DNA of 64,000 bases, from positions 20,274,995 through 20,338,994 of the forward strand of contig OZ037765.1 in assembly GCA_964035545.1 (NCBI GenBank), written 5' to 3'. Under the pieces are notes generated by a model, which saw only the letters and a list, made by a program, of their open reading frames with translations, searched no databases and had not been told where the DNA came from. Of the stretch, positions 3,014 to 64,000 are shown piece after piece. Source of the DNA: Bugula neritina. Taxonomy: Eukaryota; Animalia; Bryozoa. The translations under genes were made by a program, and so were the position numbers. Positions within the stretch are counted from its first letter, which is position 1; every line of letters begins with the position of its first letter.

Positions 3014-3079
3014 CATTTCAGTATACCAAGTATCAACACTGTGTGACTGACAGGGATAACAATATTCATCATTGTAATG
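3014..3079 (-). ncRNA. Box C/D snoRNA, snR38/SNORD1-like (28S rRNA guide)
   Basis: C box ATGATGA (3066-3072), guide GTTATCCCTGT, D box CTGA (3018-3021), terminal stem CATT/AATG. Confidence 0.85.
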
Positions 3080-3434: not shown

Positions 3435-3537
3435 GGATAAGGGCAAACATGAGTTAGAGCTGATCAACTGCATTTATTATTACAAAATGATGTTACAAAC
3501 AATCAACAGTTGTCAATATTGATAACACAGACGAGGA

Positions 3538-27900: not shown

Positions 27901-30900
27901 TTACAACAATATTTTCAAACTCACTATCAACAGGTTAAATGAAGTTGAATGAACAAGCTGGTTGCTTACAGAAACAGCTGAGTTTACAAATCTGTATATA
28001 AATGATTAGATCATTACTGGGGAAGAAAATCGTAAATTCAAGTGACATTGAAATGTGATGATGAAGGCTTATATCAAAGGCTGTGTTGATATACTTGTGG
28101 CATTGTAGGTGAGAGGCATTGTGGATAAAGCCGTTAAAGAAATGGGTATGGAGAAGGTGCTGAGAGAGTTGGACGTCACGTGGGCTAGCATGGAGTTTGA
28201 TCATAACCCCCACCCCCGTACTAAGATTACTTTACTGGGAGCTTCTGAAGAACTCATTGAGACCCTTGAGGACAACCAAGTACAGCTACAGAACATGTTG
28301 ACCTCTAAATATATCGCCTTCTTCCAGGAGCAGGTCTCTAGCTGGCAGAAAAAGCTCAGCAATGCTGATCAGGTACATGGCGTGTTGTACTTGGGAATAT
28401 GTTGTACCAATATTCTTGTTAATAACTTCTAGTTAGTCTAGTCAAAGAAATTATAAGCTAGTCCGATAATTCTTTGTTCACATATTAGGTTGTTTGTTGA
28501 CTAGATTTTGAGGCATTCGATATTTTTTTCATGTGTTCAAGTTATGACAGTGTCAATTTTTTAATTATATATCATTGCTCTACTTTAGTATTTTGTAAAA
28601 AGGTATTTCTAAAACTAAAATAATCTTGTTGGGAGACTAGTATAACTTTTCAAGCTCAGCCAAAAATTTATGTAGACTTCTTAGACTACATGTTTATAAA
28701 ATAGTCCTAAAATAGTGACAAAATAAGCTTCGTTTGCGCCAGGCAATGATTTGCAGAATGAAAGTTTTAGTACGAGTCCATTTTTACCTGTTTACTTGTC
28801 ATGTTTTATGTGTTGGCTATCAGTTTGTGTATTGGAATTACAGGTCATCACCATCTGGTTTGAAGTGCAAAGAACTTGGTCTCATCTTGAGAGCATCTTT
28901 ATTGGCTCAGAAGACATCAGAAAGCAGCTGCCTGAAGATTCAGCAAGATTTGATCAGATTGACTCTGACTTCAAGGTATTGTTCACAAGTTTTTATTTTC
29001 ATTTTGAATTTTGCAAGGTAATCCAGGTGTTTTTTGCTTTATAAACTTTTTGATGCCTATATAAAACTGTTAATATTATTGATAGTGTTTAGTGTGATAA
29101 TTTCTAATGTTGGTTTGACCTTGTAGGCTCTAGTGTCAGAGGTAGAAGTCACTAAGAACGTGGTGGATGCAACTAACAGGCCAAACCTGTTCCAACGGCT
29201 GGAAGCCCTACAAGGAAATTTGAGTCTGTGTGAAAAAGCACTCGCAGAGTATCTCGAGACTAAACGTCTTGCCTTCCCCAGATTCTACTTCGTGTCTTCT
29301 GCTGATTTACTGGATATTCTATCCAACGGCAATAACCCTGTGATTGTAAGTTGAACATTCGTTTTATCAACAAAGTTATTATGTAAGTTATGATTATTTC
29401 AGCAATTTTTATGTAATGACACCTATTCATGAACATAAATGTTGGCACATTTGTGTTATGAATCTATATTATACGTGAAAATGCATCATAAAAGTATTGG
29501 TTACGTCATAACTTTCTAAATTGCACTGCAAACATCTGTATGTCGAGTAATCAGTGAATCTACAGTACAATAAGTTATAGTATTTATTGAATTAAACTTA
29601 GCCACTGTTTTATATTTTGTACAATGATTTGTGCATGCTCAAGCTAAACTTACCCATGTTGATTTCCAGGTGGCCAGACATCTTACCAAACTGTTTGACT
29701 GCATGGCAGCCTTGGAGTTTGAGACGGACGACAAAGGAGAGGTGTGCAGTAAGAACGCCACCGACATGTACAGTAAAGATGGGGAGAAGGTAAACTTAGC
29801 CTACGCCTGTGACTGTGACGGACAAGTGGAGGTCTGGCTGAACAGACTACTGGATGACATGGTGGAGTCTGTAAGGAAGGAGTTCACTGAAGCTGTAGTG
29901 GCCTATGAAGAGAAACCTAGAGATCAGTGGCTGTTTGATTTCCCCGCACAGGTGACTCATAAATATTATTTCTAAGTTTATTATTACCTGAATTTTAGTA
30001 TTATATAAATTTATTACTTTATCAACATTGATGCGCATATTTCATGTTTACTATATCATAAATCTTATTATATATGAATAACAAATTAATAAATAATTGT
30101 TTGTCAACATATTTTATATTTATTATTGCATAAATCTTATTATATGAGTAATAAATAAATAAACCATTGCTATATCAACATATTTTATGTTGCCTTGCAG
30201 GTTGCACTCTGCGGCACTCAGATCTGGTGGACAACAGAAGTGAACATTGCCTTTGCTCGTCTGGAGGAAGGCTATGAGAATGCGTTGAAAGACTACAACA
30301 AGAAGCAGATCCAGCAGCTCAACCAGCTCATCAGCATGTTAATCAACAAGCTGTCTAAGGGAGACCGTCAGAAGATTATGACAATCTGCACCATTGATGT
30401 GCACGCCAGAGACGTGGTAGCTAAGATGATCACTCACAAGGTACTAACTGCTATGTTACGTAATCAACTGCTTTGTTTTTAGTCTGTCTCAATTGTGAGT
30501 AAACTATATAATATGTTTTTTGTAGTAGTTTCCAATTTTCTAAAACTTTTACTCATGTAGTTTGTTATTGATTTAGTGAATGACTTGGCTTTGTTAGTTA
30601 TAAAATCAACTCACTCAATTTGTAGTAAATTTATTTATACACTGTTAACAGTGCACACAACTCCAATTGAGTTCTCAATTACATTTGAGTTGCATGTAGT
30701 GCAAATTAAGTCATATTGATTAATTTATTTAATTCAAATTAATTAGTTTCTCAAAGCATAGTCTCATACAGTACACCAGGTTCTGTGTGTTTAGGTTGAC
30801 TCTTCAGCCCACTTCATGTGGCTGTCTCAGCTGAGACACAGGTGGGACGAGTCCATTAGAGAATGCTTTGCCAACATCTGTGATGCCCAGTTCAAGTATT

Positions 30901-33900
30901 CCTATGAGTATCTCGGAAACACGGCTAGACTTGTCATCACCCCCCTCACTGATAGGTGCTACATCACACTCACTCAGTCTCTCCATCTCACCATGAGTGG
31001 TGCTCCAGCTGGACCTGCTGGAACAGGCAAGACAGAAACAACTAAAGATCTTGGCAGAGCTTTGGGTATTATGGTGTATGTGTTCAACTGTTCCGAACAG
31101 ATGGACTACAAGGTAATTAGCCTCAAGTGCCTCTCAATAAATAGTCCACTTCTAAATATTTTATATTACATACCTCAAGTGCCTGTCCATAAATACTCTA
31201 TTTTTACCCAGCATTTTGTTACTGTTTTTAAACATAGCATAAATACTTCTTTCTGATTGTTTTAAAATCTGAAAACAAACTTATGGTTTGAAACATTAAC
31301 AAGATATCTTTTGATAAATACAAATAAATGAGTAAAAAAAAAAAAAAATTGTACTGTTTTTCCTAGTCAATTGGAAACATTTACAAAGGATTGGCGCAGT
31401 CTGGTGCCTGGGGTTGTTTTGATGAGTTCAACCGAATCTCTGTGGAGGTTCTCTCCGTAGTGGCTGTGCAGGTCAAAAGTATTCAAGATGCTATCAGAGA
31501 CAAGAAGAAGCGATTCAACTTCCTTGGAGAAGACATCAAGCTGCTTGACACTGTTGGTATCTTCATCACCATGAACCCAGGTAACAATTTGTTTACCTGT
31601 GTAACTTGGCAAATAGTTTTATTTGAGCAAAACATGATACATAATTAGCTTGAGTTGTATATTTATTTATTTATATACAAGTTAAATGAAATGCTAGGGT
31701 AATTTTTATACTCACTGTTATTGTGAATATTACCCTGAACTATCAAAATGATTAACAAACATGATTCATTTAAATGGATAATCTATGAGTCGTAGTATTT
31801 TAGTCATATAGTATACAAATCATATTTTGTTATTTAGGGTATGCTGGCAGAGCTGAGCTACCGGAGAATCTGAAAGCACTTTTCAGACCATGTGCTATGG
31901 TTGTACCTGACTTTGAGCTGATTTGTGAGATTATGTTGGTGGCAGAAGGATTCCTCGATGCCCGTCTGCTGGCCAGGAAGTTCATTACTCTGTACACACT
32001 ATGCAGAGAGTTACTGTCCAAACAGGACCACTATGACTGGGGTTTGAGAGCCATCAAGTCTGTACTGGTGGTAGCTGGTGCCCTGAAGAGAAGTGATCCG
32101 GATAGACCGGAGGACCAGGTGATGTTTTGATCTGCTTGACATAACTTTAGGTTCTAGTCACTAGTGAAATTTTCCATCTTTATCAAGCGTAAGTGTATAA
32201 TATATGAATATGTTACGCTAAGTAAAGGAGAGGTAAGTGCAGTAATTGAAAAGTCAAGAAAAGCATGTGTTCTAGATTAGAAATGTAGCAAAAAAGTTAG
32301 GTTTTTGCAAGAATTTCTACCTGTGTCCCAAACCAAAATTTATTAAGAAAATCAAAGAACTTATGCTATTAAAATTTCTTTACTACTGCATATAAATGAA
32401 GTATGAAGGTGTGAGAGTCAAAGTATTTATAATATAAGCTGAGCATGCATTGTATGTTTGTAGGTGTTGATGAGAGCTTTGCGTGATTTCAACACTCCCA
32501 AGATTGTGACTGATGATGTGCCCATCTTCATGGGTCTGATTGGTGACCTCTTCCCCGCTCTTGATGTGCCGCGTAAGAGAAACCTTGAATTTGAGAAGGA
32601 GCTGAGAAACGGTGCCTTGGCACTTAAACTACAACCAGAGGAAGGCTTTATTCTCAAAGTTGTTCAGCTACAGGAGTTATTTGAGGTAAATCTACACTAT
32701 TTTCATATTTTTGTAATTTCAACTATTCTTTTATTTTTCATAAGTGTTTATCAGCACATGCAACATTTAGTTTTATATCTTGCCCCATGCTTTTTAAATG
32801 TTCATGTAACACCTCTTAGTCAGTTTTTATAAGATTTAAAAAATATTTACTGCAAAAATACGTAGTCTAATGCTTTGAATGTGTATATTTTATTTTTTGT
32901 GTATGTTACTGCCACTCATTATTTAAAACTGCTTGCTACTTCTTATCACAGGTGCGTCACTCTGTCTTTATTATTGGAAATGCTGGAACAGGAAAGTCTA
33001 TGGTCTGGAAAACTCTCAACAAAACCTATCAGATGCAGAAAGTGAAACCAATAGCGCAAGATCTCAACCCCAAGGCTGTCACTAATGATGAGCTTTTTGG
33101 TATGATATTCTCAGCTTAAACAGCAATACAGTTGTGTACTCATTTTTTGTTGAGTCTATTACAAGAATGGAAAGTCAAAATTATATTTCTTATTATCAGT
33201 ATATAACTTGATAAAGATTGAATATTGGTTTGTTAAGTTATATTCAAGAACACTTTTTTAAACGAGTTGAATTTTTAAAAATAAGAACTATAAAAACTTT
33301 TTTCTCAAATTTTTTTTTTTCAAGTTGTCTATATTCTAGTGATGATATAAACTGATTATTTCAGGAATCATCAACCCGTCTACCCGAGAGTGGAAGGATG
33401 GATTGTTTTCTGTAATTATGAGAGATCTGGCCAACATCACTCACGATGGACCCAAGTGGATTGTATTGGATGGTGATATTGATCCTATGTGGATTGAGTC
33501 ACTTAACACTGTCATGGATGACAACAAGGTAATATAACAAATGGCTCATCTCAAAATAATTAGTACAGTGCAAAATAAGGACAGGTTTTCAAAAATGATG
33601 TTGTCTAGCTCTCTGATGCTTCAAATATGTGAACTCACTGTGTCCCAGAATAAAAAACATTTTAATTTATTATAAAATTAGTATATTTAAGCTATATTAT
33701 GCATTTTTTATTGAAAAAATGACAAGTTTTTAAATTTTACCCACTGAAAAATAAATTCAGTGGGTAACACATTTCAACTTTGACATAGCATAATTTTTTT
33801 ATAAACATATATTATGATTATATTTTTTTCCTTAAACTGTTCTAAAAAAGCTTGTCAATCTCTTGGTGTGCTGAATGTCTAATTCCTAGCGGTACAAGTT

Positions 33901-36900
33901 TAGATATTCCTGTTTTAGTGTTTCAACCTCACGAATTTTTTGTCCGCAACAATTGTCCGTAAATTGAGTATGAGCACGTGAGAACGAAATTGCTAACGCT
34001 TTCTGTTTACACTCTCAAATAAATTAGTTAAATTTCATTATTTTGCTCAAACTTATTTTTTACAACGATAAATATATTTTCATCTTGTTTGTTCGTAAGT
34101 ATAAAATAATTACACAGTAATCTAATTCTGTTTTCATAAATAAAGTCATCTTGAAACCTCTAGAATTTAGAGTATAGTAGCGCATCCGGTTTGTTGCCAA
34201 GAAAATGATCTGATGGCATAGCGGTTTAGTTTTCATTTATTTCGTCAGGTTAGTATTCATTGTATTTTTCCAAACTTCTCATAACTTTTTATATTTATCA
34301 AACAATATAACTTTCAGTCAATTTTTCTCTAAGGCTTCATTCTTTTGTTTTATCAATTCTTACAATGATAATCCCAATCATAACGATAACGAGTAACTCT
34401 TTAAGTTTATCATAACATTTCTATTATTAATAATTTAAAATTAATGATAATTGGGAAATAAGAACTAAATAACTAAGTAAATAACTTTTTAATGCATTAA
34501 GTTTAAATTGCACTTGCGTATTTAGACTTTAGTTTTGAATTGCCATAATTTATATTCAACTAAAACTTTTATTGCCGCGATCAGCAACTTAAAATTCAAA
34601 TTGAAATTGTAGCCATTCACCATTTAATGATTCATTTTGAATTCAATAGTCAATACTGAATATTGTAAACTGCGATGTGTAAATTCAAACTGTAAGTGTA
34701 ATGATATTGAACTCAATATGATATTACCAATACTAATACTATTACTATTAGTAGGCCCATTACTTTTCTTAATAACATAAGCATTAAGTGATTACTCTTA
34801 CTCTTACTACTCTCACTCTGAGTGCTTGATCCCTGCTTATTGGCATTTTTTATAGTTTGCACTTGATAAATTTAATTTAATTAGAAATTTAAGAATAAGT
34901 TGCTTTAATAATAATATGTTAATATATCTACTTAGTACATAATAGTGATTTGGATTAGCTCCTTAGGTTTAAGTTGAATGAGTAAGTTATACTACGGACA
35001 TGTACGCTACGGGTACTTAAGCAAATTAATCATTGCTAACAACTTGTCAATAGTGTAATAGCTTGTAACGTGCTAATAGTCAATTTAAATACAACTTTAT
35101 TCTGAAGGCTAGCTCTTGTTTTGCAACTATTTAGTTTCATTATCTTATTCATTAAGTTATTAATAGCCAATAACTTAGATTATAGCTAACCCTCATCTTC
35201 TAAGCATTAGTCTCAATAGCTTACCAAACTAAAAAACTCATATATTTTAGTTTTTATATTGTATAGAATAGTTTCATGCCTTTCAAGACCAGGCAACAGT
35301 CCACTGCTAGGAGCCATGCTTCATCAGAAAAAAGCAGTGGTCTGAAGAGCAGCAAGAGAGAAGGAAGCAACAACTGAGGGGTATGTCAACATCTGAACAA
35401 GTATAGACAAATTGAAAGTTCAGAAGAGCGATTAAAATAAAAATCATACTTGAAATATACAGCTTAATTAAGTTTAGATGAATCTTACGATGAAGCCAGT
35501 ACAATAGAAATGTAGACTAAACAATCTACTCCTACAACTAGCAAAATATTGAGAGGGCTGCAATAACATCAGCTCAAGCTCACATGGTTTCTGCAACTGC
35601 TACTTGTGAAATAATGATGAAAGTTTAAATGTGTACATCAACATTAGCAAACATTCTATAATTTGTCTTACTGTTTTTTGTAGGAGGAGATGTGAGTGTA
35701 GATAAGTTAGAAGGAAGTGTGTTAGTGAATATGTATTTCATGGTTTGTTGACAATATTTTATGTTTTGTGCATGCATTTTGTTTGTGTGAATGTCTTGTA
35801 CTCGATATAATAGGACTACTGGTGAACTGTCAATTTATACAAAAAACTAACAAGCTATTAGCCTACCTCATAAGTGGTTTGGAAAGGCACCTGCTGTATG
35901 CATATGCTGTCAATTTTAAAAGTTTAGTCTGTAGAAAATTATTTTCCAAAATAAAGTCATTCTGTTTAAAACCAATCATAAAACTTTTGTCTCTTTATGC
36001 TGCAATATTTTTAATAAATTTTTTTTGGTGTTCACTTTATAGAGCCAAAGGTATAAATATGTCTATCACAGATAAAAACTAGTATTATTTTTGAATTCAG
36101 AGCCCTTATATTAGTCTAAAACCATGTTTTGCTTATTAAAATATAAACATTCATATTTCACCATTTTTTTGGACTGCGGACTTTTGAGAGGTTAAAGGTC
36201 AAGTTTAAGCACCTATGGCAATAAAATAATCTCATATTTGAATTCAGCACCTAATAATTACCCGTATCACAAAGTTTGAGCTTTCTACTACAAGTTTTAT
36301 TTTTTGAAAAAAATTTTCTGTGTGTACTAAATATTTTGAGATGGGCCAAATAAGTAGTGGCTATTCATTTCAAATATAGACAGCACTCTCTTCTGTTACT
36401 GTATAAACAGTGTTGGTGCAATCTATATACTACTGAAGAAGTAGTTTTCATTTTTAGTTATACAGTTTGCGAAGACTGGTTATTCAGGTTGGATATAGTT
36501 AGTTTTTACCTTTTAAATTTTTATAAATTGATAATTTTCCTGTCAGCAATCTGCCAATAAATTCTTCCAGGTGCTGACTCTGGCCTCAAATGAACGTATT
36601 CCTCTGACGCCATCCATGAGACTCCTTTTTGAGATTTCTCACCTCAAGACTGCTACTCCAGCCACTGTCTCCAGAGCTGGTATTCTCTACATCAACCCTC
36701 AAGATCTGGGGTGGAACCCGTAAGTCTAACCTGCAACTCCTTGCATCTATTTCAACTCCCTATTTCGGTGCTTGTGACATTCTTCTTTTTTACCATTAAT
36801 AAATAATTAAGTTTCCTCATTTTCAAATTTGAATTTAAGCTAAGAATATGGAGTGTTTTAAATATTTACTATGCATAGAGTAGAATATTATATTACTATT

Positions 36901-39900
36901 GCCAAGTTTTAGTGCAGCTTTTGTGTTAAATACCAGCATTGTGTAATAGTTCGACATGCTTCTCTTTAGGTATGTCAACTCCTGGATTGATACAAGAGAA
37001 GTTCAATCAGAGAAAGCCAACCTCACCATTCTCTTTGAGAAGTATGTGCCACCATGTCTTGACATCATGAAAGTCAGATTCAAGAAGATCACACCTATTG
37101 CTGAGATCTCTCACATCCAGACCTTGTGCTATCTCCTAGAGGTATGTTTCTCTGCACGATATTTCTCTTAATTATACATTAAATTTTTTCCACTACCCGA
37201 ACGGGACAAAGCGGATATAGGTGAGAAATTCTCTTAATTATACACTGTCATGACCTGATTATACTCATGTAATAATGGTTGGCCTAGAAGTGATAGAAAG
37301 TTGTAAGTCTAATGCTTTATAGAAGGAGTGTCGCAGCATTTTTTATGAACTCTAAGATAATGTGTTTTCTTTGTGTCGCTATAAAATCTAAGATAATGTG
37401 TTTGTGCTGTGCAGGTGATGCTGATACCAGAGAACACACCCCCTGACTGCCCCAAGGAGTTATATGAGCTCTACTTTGTCTTCTGCTGCGTCTGGGCATT
37501 TGGAGCCTGTCTCTTCCAGGACCAGCTGACTGACCACAGAGTTGACTTCACCAAGTGGTGGGCTAATGAGTTCAAGACTATCAAGTTCCCATCTGCCGGC
37601 ACTGTCTTTGACTACTACATTGACAACACGACTCACAAGTTCGAGTCGTGGACTAAACTCGTAACCAAGTTTGAGTTGGATCCTGATATACCACTGCAAG
37701 TGAGTTATTTGTTTATATGATGGTAGTGATTTCATGACTAACATAAGCACACTGCAAGCTAGTTATAATAAATACTAATGGGTTTTTACCTGCTAGGTTT
37801 TGTGCCTAGCTATAATTGCTATGAAAAATTAAATGTGAGACCCCCTTATGAATTTAATATATTTCTGTACCATGTGTTGATATGTGTTGCTTATGCAACT
37901 TTTTATGGACACAAATAATTTTCAAAGAATGATAAAATATTCCTGAATTAATATTAGAAAATATACTTATCGATTGTTATTGTCTGTTGGCAGTCTGCCC
38001 TAGTTCACACTGCTGAGACGACTAGAACCAAGTTCTTCATGGACCTGCTGATAGAGAAGAGAAGACCCGTGATGCTGGTTGGTAGTGCCGGTACAGGAAA
38101 GTCTGTACTGATGGGAGAGAAACTCAACACTCTTCCTGACACTTTCAACATCGCCAACGTTCCCTTCAACTTCTACACAACTTCTGGCATGTTGCAAAGT
38201 GTTCTAGAAAAACCTCTTGAGAAGAAGGCGGGAAGAAACTATGGACCTCCCGGCAACAAGAGACTCGTTTACTTTATTGACGATATGAACATGCCTGAGG
38301 TACTAGCCAGTTTAAACTTTCTTAAACCAAACGTGTGCCATCTTTATAAACCTAATGCAGTAACAAAATTGTATATATCCGATAACCAAAACGCTATTTT
38401 CATATTTTATTTGCTGTCTTTATTATTGCGTGAATGAAGGAATGGCTTATTATACATTCAGAGAATGAAATATTGTTTACTGAATGTATAGCTTCTTAAA
38501 TTCAGATACCTACAAGTTGAGTTTCAAGCGATTTGACCTGGTAGGTTAACTTGTGTCTTGCAGGTAGACAAGTACTTCACTGTACAGCCGCACACACTTA
38601 TCAGACAGCACCTGGACTACAGCCATTGGTATGACAGGCAGAAGTTATCTCTAAAAGATGTACACAACACTCAGTATGTCGCCTGCATGAACCCCACAGC
38701 TGGTTCATTCACCATCAACCCACGTCTGCAGAGACATTTCACCGTGTTTGCCCTCTCCTTCCCGGGCAGAGATGCTTTGGCCACTATCTATACCAGCATT
38801 CTTACTCAGGTCTGTTTTGCTAACTTTTGCTGATGGTATTTTGAGCCTCTTTGTCGTCTATCACAGTGGCTTCGCCTTGTACTTATTTAAAGTGGGTTTT
38901 AGTGTTAGCTAAAAGATGATTCAACTAATTTAAAACATAAAAGATTATTTTATTATTTATTCCAACAAATTCAAAATATAAACTTTCTGTCGATGAGCTG
39001 TGATGCAAATTAGTGAATAATATCGCTCTTGTTAGTAGAACTTAAAACTAATGGCCCTAATACTATTGACTGTTTATCATTTATAGCATTTGCAAGTGAG
39101 TGGCATGAATTCCCAAGTTGTGAAGTTTGCACCAAACCTTGTCAATGGTGCTCTAGACTTGCATTCAAAGATGTCATCGACTTTCTTACCTACCGCTATC
39201 AAATTCCACTACATCTTCAACTTGAGAGATCTCTCCAACATCTTCCAGGTGATTATGAATACGTAGTAGACAGAGTGTAGATATCATGTAATAATACCTT
39301 ATGACTTTGCTTAGGTTTACCGTACATAGTTGTATTTATTTTCTATAAATATATAGGGTGTGCTGTTCAGTACCCCGGAAAGCGTAAAAACAACGAATGA
39401 TCTGCTATCCCTCTGGCTACACGAAGCTAACAGAGTCTATGGAGACAAGATGGTGGAAACAGCCGACACTGAGCTCTACCACAAAGTTCAGAAGGATGTA
39501 TTCAAAAAGTCTTTTGAGGATATCGAGCCTGAGGATATTTTCAGCAAGAAACCTTTGATTTACTGTCACTTTGCAACTGGCAAGTTATTTAAAATTCAAC
39601 AATTGCTCTCACATCTCTCACCTAAAAAGCTGTAGTTATGCATGGGTAGCGGTGAAAATGTTAGACAATTATAATAACTGCAAAATATTTGTTGAGGCCA
39701 ACAAGACAGTAATTGATGGCGTTACTATATTTTATAGGTATTGGTGATCCAAAGTACATGCCGGTACCTGATTGGCCGTCTCTCAACAAGCTGCTATTGG
39801 AAGCCCTAGATAACTACAATGAGCTGAATGCTGCTATGAACCTTGTCCTCTTTGAAGATGCCATGGAGCACATTTGCCGAATTAGCAGAATCCTCGAGTC

Positions 39901-42900
39901 TCCCAGAGGAAATGCTTTGCTCGTTGGCGTTGGAGGTAAGCTTATGGCCAATGTATATCTAGTACTTGAGGCACATGTTTTTCTCGAACTGAGTATGTTA
40001 CTACTTATCATATGCAAATTTTCTAGACCTGCCTTTTAAAGTTTTGCAACTTTTTTCAGGTTCTGGCAAGCAGTCTTTGGCTAGACTTGCTGGTTTCATC
40101 ACTGGTTTAGAGCCGTTTCAAATTACTATTAGGAAAGGCTACTCTATCCCCGACTTGAAGCTGGATATTGCTGGTCTATACATCAAGGCTGGAGTGAAGA
40201 ATGTTGGCTGCATGTTCTTAATGACTGACGCCCAGGTGAGTGGTTGCTTATGGAACATGAAACTGTAACCTCATTAAGTAACATAATGCTAGGTTCAAAT
40301 GTCAAGTCTCTTTGGTTTTATGTTTCGTAATTTATATGACTCACGCGGATGCTTCCAGAAAAAAATTTAGAAATCTTTTTTCAACACATATTATGACTAC
40401 AAAACTTAGTTTTGGTCTATAATCTACCATTTTGGTGTACATGTAAACATTCCAGGTGACTGATGAGAAGTTTTTGGTGCTGGTAAATGATTTGCTCTCT
40501 ACCGGTGAGATCGCTGACCTTCTACCTGATGACGACGTAGAAAATTGTATCAATGGCGTAAGAAATGAAGTGAAAGGCATTGGACTGGAGGATACTAGAG
40601 AGAACTGCTGGAAGTTCTTTATCGACAGAGTGCGAAAGATGTTAAAGGTGGTGTTGTGCTTCTCACCTGTTGGCAGTACTCTGAGAGTGAGAGGAAGGAA
40701 GTTCCCTGGTGTGGTTAACTGTACCAGCATCGACTGGTTCCACGAGTGGCCGCAAGAAGCTCTCATCTCCGTGAGCAGACGATTCATCAATGACAGCGAG
40801 TACTTGCCAGAGAATCTGAAAGATTCGGTAGCAGAGTTCATGTCCTTTGTACATACCTCTGTAAACGAAGCTTCCCAGCAGTACCTGCAGCACGAAAAGA
40901 GATACAACTACACAACCCCTAAGAGTTTCCTCGAACAGATTGCCCTCTACCTCAACATCCTGTCTACTAAGAATCACGAGCTACAAGGGAAGATGCAGCG
41001 TCTGGAGAATGGTCTAGAGAAATTGAGGTCTACAGGTATGCAACGTCAGAAGTACAGTTATACTGATGCAAATACCTGAAATCAAAGACACTGGTAGACC
41101 AATTATTATTTGAAATAATTTTAATCTTGTAGTTATGATATTTTGAAACTGCTGCAGTTAATTGATTTTATTTGCAATATTTTAGCTGCTCAGGTGGATG
41201 ATTTGAAAGCAAAACTAGCAGCTCAAGAAATTGAGTTGACCCAGAAGAACGAAGATGCCAACAAGCTGATTCAGATTGTAGGAGCTGAGACAGAGAAAGT
41301 ATCCAAAGAGAAAGCTATTGCTGATGAAGAAGAGAAAAAGGTAACGTGATGCAATCTTCAAACTCTGGTTTTGTTCAAATAACAGACTTTGTTTATTATT
41401 TTGTTAAAAAACTGCTATAATTTACAGTGAGTTTTACCATGGCAGACATATTGTTGTTTAGCACAATGTTCTTCTGATACTATACATTACATATTTAGGC
41501 ATTATTTATGGTTTACAAGACTTCACATGCTGAATTGCCTGTATACTTCTCTAGGTTGCTGTCATCAAAGAAGAAGTAACTAAAAAGCAGATATCTTGTG
41601 AGACAGATCTAGCTAAAGCTGAACCTGCTCTGATAGCTGCCCAGGAAGCTTTGAACACTTTGAATAAGGTACTAAACCTTAAATAACTACTGCAAGTGCA
41701 ACTGTTTCTTTTTTTGATTAGTACTGTTTTATTGTGTCAATTTTCTTAGCGGATCAAAGGAATGCATACTGTTTTTAAACATTCCTTTCATCATTTTAAT
41801 AAAAATAACTGTTTATGTGGTGAATATTTGCAGAACAACTTGACTGAGTTGAAGTCCTTTGGTTCACCTCCAGCTGCCGTTGTTAGTGTTACGGCAGCGG
41901 TGATGTGCCTGATGGCACCTGGCGGAAAAGTGCCTAAGGATAGAAGTTGGAAGGCTGCTAAGGGTATGATGGCCAAGGTATGTTGATGCACGATTGAGTT
42001 AATCGCCAGTTAATTTTTGTTTAAAATCTACTGGTATTTGATTGTTCAGTCAAATTTTCAGACAATATTGCGTAGTGCCAAGTCCATTTTCAATATAAAT
42101 ACTATTAGTTTTGATGTAATTGAAAATTGTATACTGTATTGGCATGTTTAGCAACTTTGTTGGCGTCTTAAACAGGTGGATGGTTTTCTTGATTCGCTAA
42201 TTAATTATGACAAGGAGAATATTCCAGACGCCTGTTTAAAGGCTCTTGAGCCATACTTGGCAAACCCAGAGTTTGACCCTGAATTTATACGTGCAAAGTC
42301 GGCAGCCGCTGCTGGGCTTTGCGCTTGGGCAGTTAATATCGTGGCGTAAGTAGAACCGATGCGTAGGCAGCCAGACATCTCCATAGATGACGCGTTGTGG
42401 CTGTTATCTGTTAGACCAAGACGTGGAGTGGCTTTCTTTATATGTTTAGCTGTTATATATTTAGTGTTCCGTGTTTCTTTCTGTTCTCTTTATACTCTTC
42501 TCTTCTGCTAATTTAACCAACCATAGGTTGACGGGTTTCTAGACTCACTCATAAACTATGACAAAGAAAATATACCCGACGCTTGTCTTAAAGCCGTCGA
42601 CCCTTATTTGCTTGACCCTGAGTTTGATGCAGACTTTATTAGAGGAAAGTCTGCTGCCGCTGCCGGCCTCTGTGCCTGGGCTATAAATATTGTCACGTAA
42701 GTGACCTAATATGTCAGCATGTCATGAGATATACACGAAGGTAGAGTACAGTATAGTAGAGAGCTAGATCTCACTCAGTCAACACTATGTATACATCTAG
42801 AGGTGTTATTGTTGTCTTAGCTATTACATAGTTTTACTACTTCCCTAACTCTCCAGTTGTGCCAGTGTTTTATTAGAAGTGAATATAAAGTAACTCAACT

Positions 42901-44720
42901 TCTGCAATCCCCTCACCCACATCACTGCTGATTGAGATAACTAAGTCATGCTATAGAATTACTTTTTATATACCGATTTGGCTTGTATTAGGATATATAC
43001 TGGTCTACACTTTTACGTTATATTTTAGTTAAAAGATATGAGAAATATATCTTGTCAATAAACCTTATTTATTGTGCCTCGTTATCTCACTCAGTTGCTA
43101 GTAACAGTTGCTAGTAACAGTTGCTAGTAACAGTTGCTAGTAACAGTTGCTAGTAACAGTTGCTAGTAACAGTTGCTAGTAACAGTTGCTAGTAACAGTT
43201 GCTAGTAACAGTTGCTAAATCTATATTGGCTTTTTGATGACAGTATGGTACATAAAGATACCGTATTTAGTGTACCACAATCTACATGATAAGCTGGTCA
43301 AGACAAGATATATTTATTCATGAAGTTGTTTTTGTGGTTTGTTGTTTTTGAGTTAGTTTTGCTGCTGGTTAAGTTTACTTTAGTTATGATACATTGTTTT
43401 ATAGTATTTTACGCCATAATAGAGAACTTTATGGTGAACTTCACTCTTTTTAGTTTCTATCGAGTCTATTGTGATGTGGAGCCTAAACGTCTTGCTCTTG
43501 CTGCTGCCAATGCCGAGTTGGCTGCTGCCGTGGAGAAACTGAAAGGAATTCAGAATAAGATCAAAGCTCTAGAGGAGGTCCTTGACAAGCTGACTGCTGA
43601 CTTTGAGAGAGCTACTGCTGAGAAGATCAGGTGTCAGGAGCAGGCTGACTCTACCAACAGAACCATCAAGTAAGCGTGACGGTTATACATGGTACACTGT
43701 CTGTTTGTGTGCTTAACATATGCGTAGTGTCAAGAGGCAATCTGAATTACTATGTAAAAAGATTATAGTATGTATTACATATATAGTACATATAGAAAAT
43801 TATTACTATTTGTATACTGTCTATAAAAATTAGCCTCTCTGCATACAGTGACATCGAAGAGCTGGTTACTTTGTTTGCTGTAATTATGTTTTATGGGCAT
43901 AAAAAGCATTGAAAAGTACATATTTTACTAACTCTTAATAGCCTGGCTAATCGGCTAGTGGGTGGTCTGGCATCTGAGAACGTGCGTTGGGCAGAGTCTG
44001 TGGAGCTGTTTAAGGAACAAGCTACGACTTTGCCGGGAGACGTGCTGCTCACAACAGCCTTTGTATCTTATGTTGGCTGTTTCATCAAGAGTTACAGAGT
44101 GGACCTGATGGAAAATCAATGGCTGCCATTCCTCACCAAACTCTCCGTAAGAAATTACTTCTATCAGCTATTTTGTCATAAGTATTGCAATATATCACCA
44201 ACTTAATAAACATCTTTGACAATCAACCTAAATTGCTCAACTGGGATAATTTTGCATGTAAAAATTGTTATAGCATGATAAATTTTTTTGAAATTTAAAT
44301 TTTTATACAATTCTATATGTAAGGTTAAATTTGTGTGATAATCTAGCAATATAATTTATCTAATAGCATAATAATATGTACTATGTATTGTTACAGGAAA
44401 ACAGTGCGGTAGGATATGAATTATGTAGCTTTAAATGTCTTGTCGCTTGCTTAGTTTGTTGATTTTATTGAACTATATTTTCTTGAATTTTATTCTATTT
44501 CACATTCTCTCTGAGTTGGGCACATATAATTATAATATTCTAGAAACTTGCTATTTTTTCCACAGACTTTAAATGCATTATTTTCTAGCAGCTATTTCTA
44601 CAAAAGTATCTTATCTTTTACATTCTTTAAGCTTTTAATGCCTTTTGTTAGAATATTTATTTATAGCTAGAAATTTTTTATATTTCCGTAGTGTTATAAT
44701 TATGCTTTCTAACATGCTAT

Positions 44721-44765
<45 letters not shown>

Positions 44766-44790
44766 TATGTATAAATATATATATAAATAA

Positions 44791-44822
<32 letters not shown>

Positions 44823-47800
44823 GTATATATATACACACACGGATAGAGATTATATACAGCAGTTATTGGTTTGTAGACTCCAATACCCGTGACAAAAGAC
44901 CTTGACCCCTTGTCCATGCTGACAGACGACGCTCAGATTGCTACTTGGAATAATGAGGGACTTCCATCAGACAGGATGTCAACTGAAAATGCCACCATCT
45001 TGTGTAACTGTGAAAGATGGCCGCTTATGATTGACCCTCAACTTCAGGTATTCACTTTGCTAATTTTAACTGCATGATTGTATGTTATATATACCGAGAA
45101 GTTACTGGTACTAAGTGCAAATTTATTTGTTGTGTTTCAGGGTATTAAATGGGTGAAAACTCGATATGCTGAGTCGCTGATAGTCGTGAGACTTGGCCAG
45201 AAAGGTTACCTCGACAGAATAGAGCACGCTGTCATGTCTGGAGACGTTGTGTTAATTGAGAACATTGAGGAGAGCATAGATCCGGTACTCGATCCTTTAC
45301 TTGGCCGTAACCTCATCAAGAAAGGTCGTTACATCAAAATGGGCGATAAAGAAGTCGAGTACAACAAAGCTTTCAAACTCATTCTGCAAACTAAAGTGAG
45401 TTTTTAATTAATTACAAAAAAAAATTTTTTTGGGCATTTTTGAGGCATATAATAATAGTGGTTAAAATTGTTGAGTTAGTTATTGTATCAACTTTTTTCA
45501 ATTTATTCTAGTTGGCTAACCCTCACTACAAACCTGAGATGCAAGCCCAGACAACACTGATCAACTTCACTGTCACCAGAGACGGTTTAGAAGATCAGCT
45601 ACTGGCGCAGGTGGTGGCCGTAGAGAGACCAGACTTGGAGCAGCTCAAGTCAGAGCTTACCCGCCAGCAGAACGAGTTCAAGATTGTGTTGAAGAAACTG
45701 GAGGATGATTTGTTGGCTAGGCTTTCCGCTGCAGGTTGTAGCTTTTACTTGGTCACGAGTCTAATATTTATTGTGCCAAGAACTTGTTTATGTTCTCCAA
45801 AAGCTGTAAGAAGTTATATGATTTCATATATAAATATCATGTAGTATATTCCCAATATAAATTTTATAGTGCTGGAAGGCCTTTTTGGTAAGAGTATATG
45901 ACTGATGAAATTAAGCAAGACAACTTGCGTGACAGGCTTAGCTCCTTTAAAGTTTAAACTGTTTTCATTATAGAGATAATAAATATAATATATATTTTGG
46001 AATATCTTGCAGAGGGGGATTTCCTGGGCGACACTGCTCTTGTTGAGAACCTTGAAACCACCAAGACAACGGCTACCGAGATTGCCGAGAAAGTGGAGCA
46101 AGCTAAAGTAACTGAAGTTCAGATCAATGAAGCCAGAGAGCACTACCGTCCAGCTGCAGCCAGGGCCTCACTTCTCTACTTTATTCTCAATGAGCTCTTT
46201 AAAATCAATCCTATGTACCAATTCTCTCTCAAGGTATTGTATCTGCAACGTTTTACATTATATTTATCTGCAAACTCATTACTTCTCTGATTTGTAACTA
46301 ATGAACTGATTATATTATAGCATTGCTACTGATGTATTTTAGGCTTTCAGCATTGTGTTTGGTAAAGCCATTGAAAGAGCAGAGCCAGCTGACGAGGTGA
46401 AGGCCAGAGTGGTAAATCTCATTGACTTCATCACTTTCTCCGTATTCAACTACACCAGCAGAGGGTTGTTTGAGAAGGATAAGCTGATCTTCGTTTCTCA
46501 GATGTGCTTCAGCGTAAGTTTGTTTATAAGTCTTACACTCATGCATTGTTCATACTTTCAACTCACAACTTAATGGTCTGCCTGGTGGGAAATGATCTCT
46601 GTGATTGTGCACTAGTATTGCTTCTATATAAAGTTATTTGGAAAATGACTCATCCATTCTATTTTCAGATTCATATTCAATGTTCAAGTAGCTTGACATA
46701 TTACATATGTGTATTGATGACTAATTTAATTTTAGATTCTGACAGTTTCCAAGGCTATCAACCCTGTGGAATTAGATTTCTTGCTAAGATTCCCTGCACA
46801 GCCGAATGTCACCTCCCCAGTTGACTTCCTCTCACATAACAGTTGGGGTGGAATCAAATCACTGTCGGGAATGGAGGAGTTCAGAAACCTGGACCGTGAC
46901 ATCGAAGGGTCTGCTAAGAGATGGAAGAAGTTTGTTGAGTCTGAGTGTCCAGAGAAAGAAAAGTTCCCTCAGGAGTGGAAGAATAAAACATCTCTGCAGA
47001 AGTTGTGTATGATGAGAGCTCTGAGACCTGACCGTATGTCCTACGCCATGGTCGACTTTGTCGCTGAGATGTTGGGTACCAAGTATGTTGAAGGTAAGGT
47101 GATAAATTTAATTGTATCTGGTTCACCTATCAAAATGTGTATGCAATTTTTGTCTTTTCAATATCAAGAAGTTAAGTAGTATTTTATGCTAAATGCTTTA
47201 TAAGTTGAAATTTTCTATTAAATATATCTTCAACAGTCACAGCTATCATAAACGTTGTACTTAATTTAATTTTTATTTAATTATAAGTTGAAATCTCAAG
47301 GCATTGTAATCTTTATAACTCTGTTTTATACTTATTTCATTTCTTTTAAATTGCAGGAAGATCAATTGAGTTTGCTAAATCTTATGAAGAGACGGGGCCA
47401 GGGACGCCCGTGTTTTTCATCCTATCACCTGGGGTGGATCCACTCAAAGACGTGGAGGCTCTTGGAAAGAAACTTGGCTTCACTTTCGACAGCAACAACT
47501 TTCATAATATCTCTCTAGGTCAAGGTCAGGAGATTGTGGCTGAACAGGCTATGGATTTGGCCGCCAAAGAGGGTCACTGGGTGGTGTTACAGGTATTGAG
47601 ATATGGTTGTTATAGCTTTAGTTAGGTGTGTGCGCCTTGCTCTGTATAGAGTTGTGTTCCCTTCTTGTATTCAATATCAAACTATAGCGATAAGGTATTT
47701 AAATGAATTTTTAAGTGTTTAAAATATTCAAAGATTTTAATGTTTTAGTAAAAATGTTCATATAAAATTACATTTATTAAAAGGTTTGCAAAGGTTTTTC

Positions 47801-50800
47801 GTATTTACTATTGTTGCGTATAAATAAAAATTTAATTATAGTTCAACATTAACTGTAAAATAAGCAGCATTTTATTTCTGCGATTGTGTAGCTAGCCCTA
47901 TTTCAATGCATGGGAACTTGGTCAAGAAATTTTTTAAAAGCCCTTATTTTATATTTTAATGTTTATTAGTTTTGATTAACAAATGAGGTAACTGTAACTA
48001 GCAATTTCCTTATCTATGAAATCATTAAAGTTTTTTTAGTAAAAAATTAAGAAATTTGTATAAAAAACATGTTTCTACTGTTGTAGGTATCTGAGAAAAT
48101 CATTTACCTCCAATGTTACAAGTATTTATTTTATAAAAAATGTGCTGTTCTTTGCTTTAGAATGTGCACTTGGTTGCTAAGTGGCTGGGAACATTGGAGA
48201 GGAAGTTAGAAGAACACAGTCTAACCGCTAATGATGCCTACAGAGTGTATATTTCTGCAGAGCCAGCTAGCAGTGCTGAGTACCATATCATTCCTCAGGT
48301 ATACTAATTTTCCACCACCAATCTAGGGTACAAAGTCAAACAGTGTCATATAGATTTTTACCTGCATACAAAATACAAATTAGTGTCATTGATTTGTAGT
48401 TATTACAATGTAGTCTCATTATTATGTGTTAATTTTTTTGTGTTTATTACTAAATAGCAACTTTTAATAAATAATTTTTTATTAAAATTTGAGATGCATT
48501 AAACTTTTAAATAGCTGCTTTTGAGTATTTCAAATGCACAATTTAAACTTAAGACTGAATGTACTTCTTCAGGGTATCCTTGAGTCAGCTATCAAAATCA
48601 CCAATGAGCCCCCAACTGGTATGACAGCCAACTTGCATAAAGCACTAGACAACTTTAACCAAGACACTCTGGAGATGTGTGCCAGAGAGAATGAGTTTAG
48701 AAGCATACTCTTCTCTCTATGCTATTTCCATGCTGTTGTTTGTGAGAGAAGAAAGTTTGGACCACAAGGTACAACTTTCTAACTTTTTCATATTTTTTGA
48801 GCTTTTGAGTTACATTAAATACTATTTGATTTTAACTGGAAGGAATATTATAGATAGGCAGTGGCATAGGTTTTCTTTTCTGCATCAAATACCTAGAGTA
48901 AAGTTTATCATAGACTAAGGTGCTTGTGCAACTATACAGTTGTCAACTGAAACAGCTAGTACTTTATAGCTTTGAAAATTCATATCAAGGATCGGACAAT
49001 GTTTTAATCCATATTCAGCATTTACAAATAATGTATTAAAATTTTAATTGCTGTTAGGTGATCTGAAATTGTAATTAAAAGATTTTTTACTATTGGTATT
49101 AGGTCAAATGACCAGATTATTTGAAATTATGTTGAGAGTTGTCTACCCAGTGCAGTATATATACATTTTTATGAAAATTATTTTATTTTATACGGAAGTA
49201 AGCTGAAAATATTTCATAGACATGTGATTATATTTCTCCTCATGTCGTTCAGGCTGGAACAGAGTATACCCGTACAACACTGGAGACTTGACTATCAGTG
49301 CCATGGTGCTGTACAACTACCTGGAGGCTAATGCCAAGGTCCCGTGGGAAGATCTGCGATATCTCTTTGGCGAGATTATGTACGGCGGCCATATTACCGA
49401 TGACTGGGACAGGAAGTTGTGTCGAACATACCTGGAGGAATACATGCATCCCGATATGGTGAGAGATGCGCACTCGCATTATGCATAACATGCTGCATAT
49501 TCGTTTGTGAAATATCGCAATTAGTGCTTGCAGACGCGAATTTATCTGATAATATATTGAATGGTGAGAATATATGTAAATAGTTGAACAAGTATACTAA
49601 TGATTGCTTGATAATATCATCAACGTAGTCTGTTTAACAACTTATATTCATTATGCAGAAATCAAGATGCGCTTCGGCTAATTGGCTTCAAAAAGTCTGC
49701 CTACTAACGATAATTAGTTGAATCATTTAGATCTCGCATTCGTTAAGGTCTTCCTGCTTAACCAATTAGGGTTTTCCACTCCAGGCACTCGTAATCTTCT
49801 TAAGAGTTGCTTGGGTTGAACTTGTTGAGTTACTCTAAAAACTTATTTAATTATGTTGGACTTCAAACTAAAATAAGCTTTATTTTATGATGGTATGCGA
49901 GTATGTTTGTTGCAACAAGTTAAAGGACTTTCTAGTGTTTGCTGATAATACGTATATGAACAGCGAACTGATCGTAAAGTTGTTACTAATTATTGAACTG
50001 CTATAATGAGGGTATTGTTTCGCAGATTATTTCATCTTCTTTTTATAATTATGTAAACTGCAAAGTAATTGTATATTCTGTATTGCTATAGGTTTGTAAT
50101 GATTGAGCTTATGCTGAATGTAATGCAATATAACTGATATCCTCAACTGTATATTACATATATATAAATTAGCTTGGCACTCCAATATACACTTTTATAT
50201 GTGTAATTAGACTGTGTGTGCCACAATTAGCTTTTATTACAATACACATGCTTTCCTAATAATAATTTCAACCTATTTCCTATACTTCAATACAACCTAA
50301 TTTCTTTATTATATTACTTTAAAACTACGTTAGCCAGGATGCCAGAGTAAATAGCAGATAATTAGACGAAATATTATATTGCAACTGAAAACCTTTTGGT
50401 TACTTGCTAGCAGTATTAGTGAAGTACAGATATATGTCATGTAATTCCTATTAGTTGTAACTTTGAACTGGTAAATGATTAGTAAGTGACTGAAATATAT
50501 AATAGTTTCAAGTGTGTGATATTCCCAGTGATATTTCTGCTATTTCTGCATTCCTGGTTTAGTTGGAGGGAGAGTTGTACTTGGCTCCTGGGTTTCCCAT
50601 TCCTCCCAACTCCGACTACAAGGGGTACCACGCCTACATTGACGAATGCCTGCCTCCAGAAAGCCCCTACCTCTACGGTCTGCATCCAAATGCTGAGATT
50701 GAGTTTCTCACAACTAACTCTGATGCCTTGTTCAAAACCGTGTTTGAAATGCAACCAAGAGATGCCAGTGCTGGCAGCGGTGGTGGTGCCACCAAGGATG

Positions 50801-52178
50801 AGAGAATCAAGGTAGGTTGAAAGATTCAAGGAGAATGTCTTCTTTTCGTTGTCTTGAGTATTTTTATAGCCTATGTAGAATTTTAACACCACTGAACAGA
50901 CATGGTGCCTTGCTTGATCCTCGGATTACTATTCATAGGATAACGTTATTGGTGTTTTTATTGGTAGACTATTCTGGATGAAATAGTAGAGAAACTGCCC
51001 GAAGAGTTCAACATGATGGAGATCATGAATAAGGTACCCCCGGAGGAGAGAACTCCCTATGTCATTGTCGCATTCCAGGAGTGTGAGCGAATGAATACAC
51101 TAACCAATGAGATCAGAAGATCCCTGAAGGAATTGGATCTTGGGCTTAAGGTAACTAAAATGTCTTTTTTTTTCTAAACCATAAGATAAAATATGTATTT
51201 CTGAATATATTTATGTATGTATTGTGTATTTTTCTTCTTATTTTATTCAATGTTTTATGTTGTGGTTTTATTAAACTCCAGGGTGAATTGACCATCACCA
51301 GTGATATGGAAGATCTAGGAAATGCTCTGTACCTGGACGGAATGCCCGAGTCGTGGGCAAAGAGAGCTTACCCGTCACTCTTTGGTCTGGCTCAATGGTA
51401 TGCTGACTTGCTACTTCGTGTAAAAGAACTCGAGACCTGGGTCAGCGACTTCCAACTTCCTGCTGCCGTCTGGTTGGCTGGATTCTTCAATCCGCAGTCT
51501 TTCCTGACAGCTATTATGCAGCAGGTAAGGGTGCTGTCAGATGACAGAGTTACTCAGTCAATTGAGTCATTGAATAGGTGTTTATAAGCTCGGGAGGTTT
51601 TAGCACTAAAATTATATTTTTATTGTTTTATTTTAATAAAAATGATTATTTTTCTCAGTTTTTTATATCTTTGAACCTAATTTCACTAAAATTATATATT
51701 TATGCAAATGCCACTGGCTACAAAATATAGCATATACAATTTTAGGTTTAATATAATATTGTTGAGCAAGAAATAACCTAATCATATATTCATGTGATTG
51801 TAGATGGCACGTAAGAATGAATGGCCACTTGACAAAATGGCTCTACAGTGTGATGTGACCAAGAAGTCACGAGATGACATGAGTGGACCGCCCAGAGAGG
51901 GTGCTTACGTTCATGGACTGTTTATGGAGGGAGCCAGATGGGACACGCAGACTGGTATGATTGGCGAGGCCCGTCTCAAGGAGCTCGCACCGTCTATGCC
52001 TGTCATCTTCATCAAAGCTATCCCAGTTGACAGGATGGAGACAAAGAATATATACGAGTGCCCAGTATATAAAACTAAGCAGAGAGGCCCAACATTTGTC
52101 TGGACATTCAATCTGAAGACAAAAGAAAAAGCTGCAAAATGGATTCTAGGAGGAGTGGCTCTATTGCTGCAAGTCTAA
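15962..52178 (+). CDS. DNAH9/DNAH17: Axonemal outer-arm dynein beta-type heavy chain (DNAH9/11/17 class), complete, ~62 exons
   Basis: P-loops GPAGTGKT (~31011), GNAGTGKS (~32975), GSAGTGKS (~38081) and GVGG|SGKQ (39925-40072); [21 protein letters not shown], stalk/MTBD; C-terminus [23 protein letters not shown]...GGVALLLQV*. Confidence 0.97.
20525..20733 (+). mobile_element. tRNA-derived SINE remnant in a dynein intron
   Basis: GC-rich tRNA-like head with degenerate A box and B box GGTTCGAGCC (20580-20589). No paired acceptor stem; followed by a ~140-nt body and T-rich tail. Confidence 0.6.
33543..36347. mobile_element. Degenerate DNA transposon with ~26-bp TIRs and 4-bp AAAT TSD (Sola1-like), filling most of a 3-kb dynein intron
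   Basis: Left end GGCTCATCTCAAAATAATTAGTACA; reverse complement of right end GGCCCATCTCAAAATATTTAGTACA. AAAT flanks both ends (33539-33542, 36348-36351). Confidence 0.7.
42176..42345 (+). CDS. Dynein alternative exon A (MTBD helices H4-H6 and start of CC2), mutually exclusive
   Basis: cag|170 nt|gtaagt; encodes [56 protein letters not shown](A). Confidence 0.92.
42527..42696 (+). CDS. Dynein alternative exon B (MTBD helices H4-H6 and start of CC2), mutually exclusive
   Basis: tag|170 nt|gtaagt; encodes [56 protein letters not shown](T). Confidence 0.92.
43092..43217. repeat. Perfect 13-bp minisatellite (CAGTTGCTAGTAA) x9.7
   Basis: Units start at 43092 and every 13 nt to 43209 (last unit partial), with no mismatches. 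Confidence 0.97.
44726..44839. repeat. (TA)n microsatellite
   Basis: TA run just upstream of the dynein acceptor at 44876. Confidence 0.95.
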
Positions 52179-59500: not shown

Positions 59501-59900
59501 ATTTGCATGTAATACTTGTGAGATGTTTTTAGAATATAAAATAAACATTAGCAAAGACATCTACAAAAAATGCTTAGAAAATAAAAGCTATGAAAATGGT
59601 GCTGACTATTTTAAACTGGTAACTTTCAAGTTCAGGTTTTGTAACGAGTAAAACTTCAAATACATCTACAGGTTCTGTGTGGGGGACAAGTTTTACTTGG
59701 TTGATAAGAGGATTATGTGTGAGAAACATTACATGGAGGAGGATTTGATGAACCAAGAGACAGCGTCTCTACTCAACACAAGCAGCCATGACCACTCTAC
59801 AGACTCTCATCACCTCAACGGCAGCCCCTTAACAGAAAGTGGCATAGATTTGTCATGCCGTTCTAAGGGTGATACAAACATCGACAATGCCATCTCATGA
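56521..59900 (+). CDS. LMO1/LMO3: LIM-domain-only protein (LMO1/LMO3/Beadex class); exons 56521-56610, 56974-57125, 59274-59399, 59672-59900
   Basis: CAGCSQ|VIKDKYLLKAVNEVWHEECLKCSCCNCLLGEVGSSLFVRANLLLCKQDYLR|LFGTPGSCSAC...VMRAREHAYHIDCFSC...R|FCVGDKFYLVDKRIMCEKHY: two LIM domains and no homeodomain. Confidence 0.93.
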
Positions 59901-63300: not shown

Positions 63301-64000
63301 CTTTTTCTTTTCTTTCCAAGTTTTAATTGCGAGCCTTTTCTCTTCCTGCCTAGTGAGAAGCTCTCTGTACCATATCTCATGATCCCTCACTTCATTGGCA
63401 GTCTTTGTTGGCAGCCTAGAAGTTGCCTCCCTTAGAAATTGGTCTTTCCCCTGCAAGTAGTGAACGCATTAGTCTAGCTAATGACAGAGATCTATGTTGG
63501 TTTGTTGTTATGCCTAAGAAAAGCCAATCAGACATTATTAGGGAATCTACCTTGAACCGAACTCTCCACTTGAGAAAGGTGTTGTGGTCATACTCGTCCC
63601 AGCCACCCCTGACACCCCCTGTATCTTCTAGAAATTTCTGTAATCATTCATATTTGGCATACAATATAAACAACAGTAAATAAACTTCCCTAAAAAATTT
63701 TGTCTTACAAAACGTTCAGCTGACAGAGAGGTCACAATAAATATAAAAATCATAAAAACTTAGAAGACATTTAGTTTTTCTCTCAGTTACTATCAATGCT
63801 TCTTTTGCTCCCCTTCAATTTATTTACCAACTTGGTAAAAGAGAATTTTTTAGTCATAGCCAGTAGAAATAAAAGACACATTACAAGGTAGAGACTTACA
63901 GTATATTGTGCCACCTCAGGTGGCAGATTGCTAGTGACATCCTTAGCACCAGGTGGCTTAGAGGTCAAAGGTCGAGTGCTTGGAACTCGTTGGTCAGTCT
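60339..64000 (-). CDS. CCDC112: Coiled-coil domain protein 112 (5' part lies beyond the window)
   Basis: LPPEVAQY, KFLEDTGGVRGGWDEYDHNTFLK, coiled-coil exons and C-terminus VSRDPSRLLQPTQGWKSRTK...HR|AVPTWRQGL*, matching recalled CCDC112 motifs. Confidence 0.85.

What the first reader, a model, noticed from the sequence alone, without database searches (positions are those of the whole stretch)
42176..42696. Mutually exclusive duplicated exons swap half of the dynein microtubule-binding domain
Seen: two tandem 170-nt exons with the same phase and intact AG/GTAAGT sites lie between exons 41834-41977 and 43454-43669. 170 is not a multiple of 3, so including both or neither shifts the frame. The first 23 residues are identical but 17 of those 23 codons differ synonymously, which points to an old duplication with both copies under purifying selection rather than an assembly artefact. 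The 9/57 amino-acid differences cluster in LEPYLAN/VDPYLLD and [18 protein letters not shown]. Known: this segment is MTBD H4-H6 plus the start of stalk CC2, and H6 contacts tubulin. Inference: one gene makes two outer-arm motors with tuned microtubule affinity (e.g. cilia vs sperm, or larva vs adult), doing by splicing what vertebrates do with the DNAH9/11/17 paralogs. I cannot confirm whether this is already described.
Basis: partly seen in the sequence, partly recalled or inferred. Interest (0 to 1): 0.9.

Follow-up and report, generated by a model that had tools for sequence, protein, structure and literature searches.

The report
Swappable exon in ciliary dynein's foot
A moss animal's main ciliary motor gene keeps two old, working copies of the exon for half of its microtubule-gripping foot, so it very probably makes two slightly different motors by either-or splicing; this is a known trick in a spot I found no report of, and the differences are small.

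Summary
Two 170-nt exons (42176-42345, 42527-42696) encode helices H4-H6 and the start of CC2 of an outer-arm dynein beta heavy chain. Either alone keeps the frame; both or neither give early stops. The pair is intact in three other diverged lineages (probably bryozoans). Synonymous sites are near saturation and both copies are under purifying selection (uncorrected pN/pS 0.06-0.21), so both are almost certainly translated, one per mRNA. Lingula and Lineus have one copy. The functional reading is weaker. The differences are conservative and partly off the microtubule interface. One fixed Glu/Asp difference sits at the equivalent of dynein-1 E3378, a known affinity-tuning residue, and B is one charge more acidic. 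The genome also has a second intact beta gene with a single B-type exon, so splicing adds to paralogs rather than replacing them. Duplicated mutually exclusive exons are a known kind, one is described in Schistosoma dynein-1, and this scan noted many in this genome, including one in a dynein ring. I found no paper on one in an axonemal microtubule-binding domain.

The parts
15971..52175 (+). Outer-arm dynein beta heavy chain gene (DHC4-beta, DNAH9/11/17 class), about 60 exons, complete
   Evidence: tblastn of the Lingula ortholog covers 4449 of 4466 residues in order; best PDB hits are DNAH17, DNAH9 and Chlamydomonas OAD beta
41834..41977 (+). Constitutive upstream exon (MTBD H1-H3), ends in phase 0
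42176..42345 (+). Alternative exon A (MTBD H4-H5-H6 and start of CC2); E25, N30, E36, junction Ala; pyrimidine-poor acceptor
42360..42387 (+). Candidate 5' arm of an RNA stem that would loop out exon B (weak, unproven)
   Evidence: p 0.02 here (post hoc); 0.075 and 0.06 in two independent species; 0.48 in the near-identical L026
42474..42512 (+). CU-rich pyrimidine tract and branch-point-like CTAAT (42508-42512) before exon B
   Evidence: the tract is also present before B, not A, in L033 and L039, but not in L027
42527..42696 (+). Alternative exon B; D25, D30, D36, junction Thr
42784..42822 (+). Candidate 3' arm of the same stem (weak, unproven)
43454..43669 (+). Constitutive downstream exon (stalk CC2), starts in phase 2

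Best explanation
This is a tandem-duplicated, mutually exclusive exon pair that arose within the bryozoan-type clade. Step 1 (shown by comparison, direction inferred): an intron right after H6/start of CC2, present in all clade members and absent in Lingula and Lineus, made H4-H6 a self-contained 170-nt cassette. Step 2 (shown): the cassette was duplicated, and both copies have been kept to synonymous saturation in at least four lineages. Step 3 (inferred): each productive mRNA carries exactly one copy. A+B and skipped products have early stops and would be removed by nonsense-mediated decay. The choice is probably regulated through unequal acceptors (pyrimidine-poor A, CU-rich B) and perhaps a stem that loops out B; steric exclusion is unlikely because the branch-point-like motif is about 160 nt from A's donor. 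Step 4 (inferred, about 40%): the two motors differ only slightly in microtubule affinity or release. B is one charge more negative around H5-H6 and has Asp for Glu at the E3378-equivalent position, so it should grip the acidic microtubule a little less than A. The confidence given is for steps 1-3.
For: Frame logic. Pair with intact splice sites in L026, L027-29/44/45, L033 and L039. Against orthologs, A has pS 0.74-0.88 and pN 0.08-0.16; B has pS 0.81-0.88 and pN 0.05-0.09; Fisher p at most 1e-10 in all six comparisons, in the range of the flanking constitutive exons. A copies form one side of a branch in protein and DNA trees (82/76 and 68/87). Columns 25, 30, 36 and the junction codon separate A from B in all four lineages. 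Column 36 maps to human DYNC1H1 3380, i.e. mouse E3378 (offsets); E3378K slows dynein-1 and lengthens its runs, and motility tracks electrostatic binding energy (PMC4987762). Net charge of columns 24-41 is -2 in all A and -3 in all B.
Against: No clear conserved docking/selector element was found. Tree support is below the starred thresholds. The differences are conservative and common among single-copy orthologs. Fixed A/B columns are also what shared descent alone predicts. C3, L036, L042 and L043 each carry only one copy. PMC4987762 disputes the E3378-R3382 salt bridge, and column 40 is not Arg in these proteins.
Confidence: 0.85

Rival explanations
1. Splicing is mutually exclusive, but the two proteins are functionally equivalent. 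Both exons are kept because each is included often enough (by chance or in different tissues) that losing either lowers the output of working motor. This differs from the best explanation only in step 4.
For: Conservative replacements at columns that vary freely among animals. Interface basics are unchanged. C3 and L036 appear to have lost A and do without it.
Against: Position-specific residues and acceptor styles are kept across four saturated lineages, and the charge difference is consistent.
Confidence: 0.4
2. The exon choice changes a partner or a modification site on the outer face of the MTBD (H5 and the H5-H6 loop) rather than tubulin affinity.
For: Four of nine differences lie in H5 or the H5-H6 loop. 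In the other outer-arm heavy chain, H5 is the binding site of light chain LC1 (10.1101/2020.12.08.415687).
Against: That paper describes LC1 only on the other heavy chain's MTBD, and the beta MTBD lacks such contacts. No partner is known.
Confidence: 0.08
3. One copy is a poison or dead exon: it is either never used or used only with the other to trigger decay.
For: A+B is not sterically blocked and gives an early stop.
Against: Both copies show strong protein-level constraint in the reading frame of single inclusion, which a frame-shifted or unused exon would not keep.
Confidence: 0.06
4. Assembly artefact or recent duplication.
For: None. Such an artefact does exist in the Lingula scaffold as a near-identical five-exon repeat, which shows what one looks like.
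Against: 72% identity, saturated synonymous sites, unrelated flanks, and presence in independent assemblies of other species.
Confidence: 0.01

Closest known systems
Mutually exclusive exon in Schistosoma mansoni cytoplasmic dynein DHC1 (Pillmann et al. 2011, PMC3228551; Kollmar 2016, PMC5100056, notes that some DHC genes have alternative motor-domain splice forms)
   Same: A tandem homologous exon pair of equal length in a dynein heavy-chain gene, predicted from sequence.
   Different: [quoted passage not shown] This one is in an axonemal outer-arm beta chain and covers MTBD H4-H6. Kollmar does not list which genes he means, so prior unpublished annotation cannot be excluded.
Arthropod muscle myosin heavy chain MXE clusters (described in PMC3228551)
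   Same: Duplicated exons swap parts of a motor and are thought to fine-tune its mechanochemistry; this is the best 'works like' analogy.
   Different: Myosin has many clusters with tissue-specific use. Here there is one pair, and use and effect are untested.
Vertebrate OAD beta paralogs DNAH9/DNAH11/DNAH17 (PMC6288205, PMC7041708)
   Same: Several beta chains per animal; same protein class.
   Different: Paralogs differ along the whole chain and in axonemal position. The isoforms here differ at 9 of about 4,460 residues, all at the stalk tip, and this genome also has a true paralog (94.6% identical in the flanks).
Competing RNA pairing (docking site/selector) control of MXEs, as in Dscam1 and 14-3-3 (from my own knowledge)
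   Same: There is a weak hint of a stem from just after A's donor to the intron after B.
   Different: No conserved docking sequence, and no support for the competing upstream pairing.

Membership tests
Tandem-duplicated mutually exclusive exons | Adjacent homologous exons encoding the same structural segment | tested here: met
   both match PF12777 152-207
Tandem-duplicated mutually exclusive exons | Same length, phase and intact splice sites | tested here: met
   170 nt, phase 0/2, AG and GTAAGT in five loci
Tandem-duplicated mutually exclusive exons | Both-or-neither inclusion is non-productive | tested here: met
Tandem-duplicated mutually exclusive exons | Both copies under protein-level constraint | tested here: met
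Tandem-duplicated mutually exclusive exons | Transcripts carry one exon or the other, each observed | not tested
OAD beta heavy chain (DHC4-beta) | Closest to DNAH9/17 and algal OAD beta; colinear over the full length with annotated beta chains | tested here: met
   (77.6% to the Lingula ortholog in the flanks)
Steric-hindrance MXE | Branch point of the second exon too close to the first exon's donor (about 50 nt or less; own knowledge) | tested here: not met
   intron of 153-564 nt; branch-point-like motif at -19 in the window and L039 (the branch point is predicted, not mapped)
Docking-site/selector MXE | Conserved intronic element pairing alternately with two partners, with covariation | tested here: inconclusive
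   downstream pairing p 0.02, 0.20, 0.075, 0.06 and 0.48; upstream pairing p 0.25-0.38; introns not alignable

The most novel reading that the evidence does not exclude
Bryozoans regulate, by cell type or stage, which of two microtubule-binding feet the outer-arm beta motor carries, and the two forms differ measurably in affinity or velocity through the H5-H6 charge and the E3378-equivalent residue. That would be a natural pair of otherwise identical axonemal motors that isolates the role of MTBD affinity in ciliary beat.
Probability: 0.3. Interest if true: 0.7.

Novelty: new member of a known kind. Interest (0 to 1): 0.45.

Why it matters
Axonemal dynein diversity is usually explained by paralogous genes that differ everywhere, so it is hard to tie beat differences to one domain. 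Here two isoforms would be identical except for nine residues at the stalk tip, kept for a long time in several lineages. If their use is regulated and their binding differs, they test directly whether small electrostatic changes in the MTBD, known from engineered dynein-1 mutants, are used in nature to tune cilia. If they behave alike, it is one more of many duplicated exons in this genome.

Tried and rejected
Relatives were found through the neighbouring AAA4 exon (40456-41076), through homologous proteins, and once through another species' exon B (L039). RefSeq isoform pairs from ten invertebrate species showed no MTBD swap. Lingula X1/X2 looked promising (same length) but differ at one residue inside a near-identical five-exon repeat. 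I first took L036 to be the ortholog of the C3 paralog; the tree does not support that and I withdrew it. No remnant of exon A was found in the C3 or L043 introns. Recent gene conversion of the identical first 23 residues is rejected because synonymous sites there are saturated. Conserved intron motifs, Rbfox-type TGCATG and ungapped stems gave nothing convincing. Sample accessions were not found in papers, so species names and divergence times are unknown. The search for the other noted dynein pair did not locate it.

Full report
Verdict. The finding is real. [quoted passage not shown] Splicing was not observed, and a functional difference between the two forms is plausible but unshown.

The observation. 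Exon A (42176-42345) and exon B (42527-42696) are each 170 nt with AG acceptors and GTAAGT donors. They lie between a phase-0 exon end (41977) and a phase-2 exon start (43454). One copy keeps the frame. Both give a stop after codon 61, neither gives a stop after codon 6, and reading A into its intron stops at codon 57. The copies are 121/170 identical, with pS 0.98, dN 0.09, 8 replacements in 56 codons and a different junction codon.

The gene. The Lingula ortholog aligns in order over 15971-52175 and covers 4449 of 4466 residues; this exon is the only duplicated one. The best solved-structure matches are DNAH17, DNAH9 and Chlamydomonas OAD beta. An AlphaFold model of the Lingula homolog (mean pLDDT 92) puts H4 at exon columns 1-9, H5 at 18-28, H6 at 35-39 and CC2 from 43 (the helix names are my assignment by order). 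The host is probably a bryozoan. This rests on sample names such as BRYA among the closest relatives and on other agents' unchecked notes. I did not test it.

Conservation. Contigs found through the neighbouring AAA4 exon carry the same pair, in the same order and with intact sites. They are L026 (nearly the same species), L027-29 with L044-45 (one species), L033 and L039. Against the three diverged lineages, A has pS 0.74-0.88 and pN 0.08-0.16, and B has pS 0.81-0.88 and pN 0.05-0.09. All Fisher p values are 1e-10 or smaller, and the pN/pS ratios fall in the range of the constitutive neighbours. An unused or only frame-shifted exon would not keep this pattern, so each copy must be translated in frame. 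A copies group together in both trees with moderate support. Columns 25 (E/D), 30 (N or S/D), 36 (E/D) and the junction codon separate A from B in all four lineages; column 29 also differs but varies within each set. A cut first exon in L035 has D25, so that column may not be absolute.

History. Lingula has one copy and lacks the 3' intron; Lineus lacks both flanking introns. All bryozoan-type genes form one clade (100/100) and share the 3' intron wherever the contig reaches it. L042 and L043 have a single exon with D25/N30/D36, perhaps the pre-duplication state. The window's genome has a second intact beta gene on C3: 94.6% identical in the flanks, with 70% of fourfold sites differing and a single B-type exon. 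It groups with the window gene (89.5/93) among pair-bearing genes, so it most likely duplicated later and lost A. No remnant of A is detectable. L036 also has a single B-type exon, but its position is unresolved. Deep nodes are weak, so this order of events is a best guess.

How exclusivity could work. The A-B intron is 153-564 nt, with a branch-point-like motif 19 nt from B's acceptor in two species, so steric exclusion is unlikely. Decay of the frame-shifted products is sufficient in principle (established knowledge). The acceptors differ: B has a CU-rich tract in three of four lineages, while A's is pyrimidine-poor. That suggests regulation at the 3' splice sites (inference). With fixed windows, the segment just after A's donor pairs with the intron after B at p 0.02 (window) and 0.20 (L033), both post hoc. 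The independent tests gave 0.075 (L039) and 0.06 (L027), about 0.03 combined by my Fisher arithmetic, but the near-identical L026 gave 0.48. The competing upstream pairing is at chance level. This is a hint only.

What the swap could do. The MTBD interface is H2, H3, H4 and H6 (PMC6629372). H4 is identical in the window's A and B. Columns 24, 25, 29 and 30 lie in H5 or the following loop; 35, 36 and 40 lie in or just after H6; 53 and 57 are in CC2. Offsets and one search put column 36 at human DYNC1H1 3380 and column 40 at 3384, which I take from my own knowledge of the numbering to be mouse E3378 and R3382. This assumes the single alignment gap lies before H6. E3378K slows dynein-1 and lengthens its runs, and motility scales with electrostatic binding energy even for residues away from the interface (PMC4987762). 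All B copies are one charge more negative than A over columns 24-41, which predicts slightly weaker binding. Against a large effect: Glu and Asp at 36 are both common among 106 animal beta sequences (69 and 30), Lys41 is invariant, and Arg39 is shared. I put a real, selected difference at about 40%.

What is known. Dynein mutually exclusive exons are documented for Schistosoma DHC1, and Kollmar notes unnamed motor-domain splice forms. Searches for an axonemal, MTBD or bryozoan case found none, though the library lacks most subscription papers. RefSeq isoforms of ten other invertebrates show no MTBD swap. This scan holds 120 notes with the words 'mutually exclusive exon' for this genome, one of them in a dynein ring (unchecked). 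It is therefore a new member of a known kind, in a location that makes a clean experiment possible.

Limits. Interest 0.45.

Noticed in passing
G000:C3:31.696-31.731 Mb (L021-L025), minus strand: A second intact OAD beta heavy-chain gene with one B-type MTBD exon; probably a younger duplicate that lost exon A.
   Followed up: yes
window 43092-43217: Perfect 13-nt tandem array (9.7 copies) in the intron after exon B.
   Followed up: no
L003 (C193), L006 (C125), C165: Dynein matches on small contigs are interrupted only by TAA/TAG, which suggests ciliate-code contaminant contigs in the assembly.
   Followed up: no
L041:17768-23300 (Lingula anatina scaffold): A near-identical tandem repeat of five exons explains RefSeq isoforms X1/X2 (one residue apart); probably an assembly artefact or a very recent duplication.
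   Followed up: partly
P0453/P0350, P0405/P0457, P0454/P0455, P0468/P0369, P0486/P0479, P0481/P0484: OAD beta isoforms in a hemichordate and echinoderms differ by a 5-aa insert after residue 611, and in two clams by a 42-aa insert at the same place: a shared alternative insert in the tail. The window gene aligns without a break there.
   Followed up: partly
window 33535-36570: Unusually long (3 kb) AT-rich intron inside AAA2, with no coding match seen.
   Followed up: no
window 3500-5000 (-), 11500-14700 (-), 56956-59900 (+), 60800-64000 (-): Neighbours: ribosomal protein P0/L10, a BEN-domain protein, a two-LIM-domain protein and a coiled-coil protein without a Pfam hit.
   Followed up: partly
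window 1388-3079: About 275-nt tandem units at 91-95% identity next to the ribosomal protein gene; another note (s1-481341) calls the region a snoRNA host gene. Not tested.
   Followed up: no
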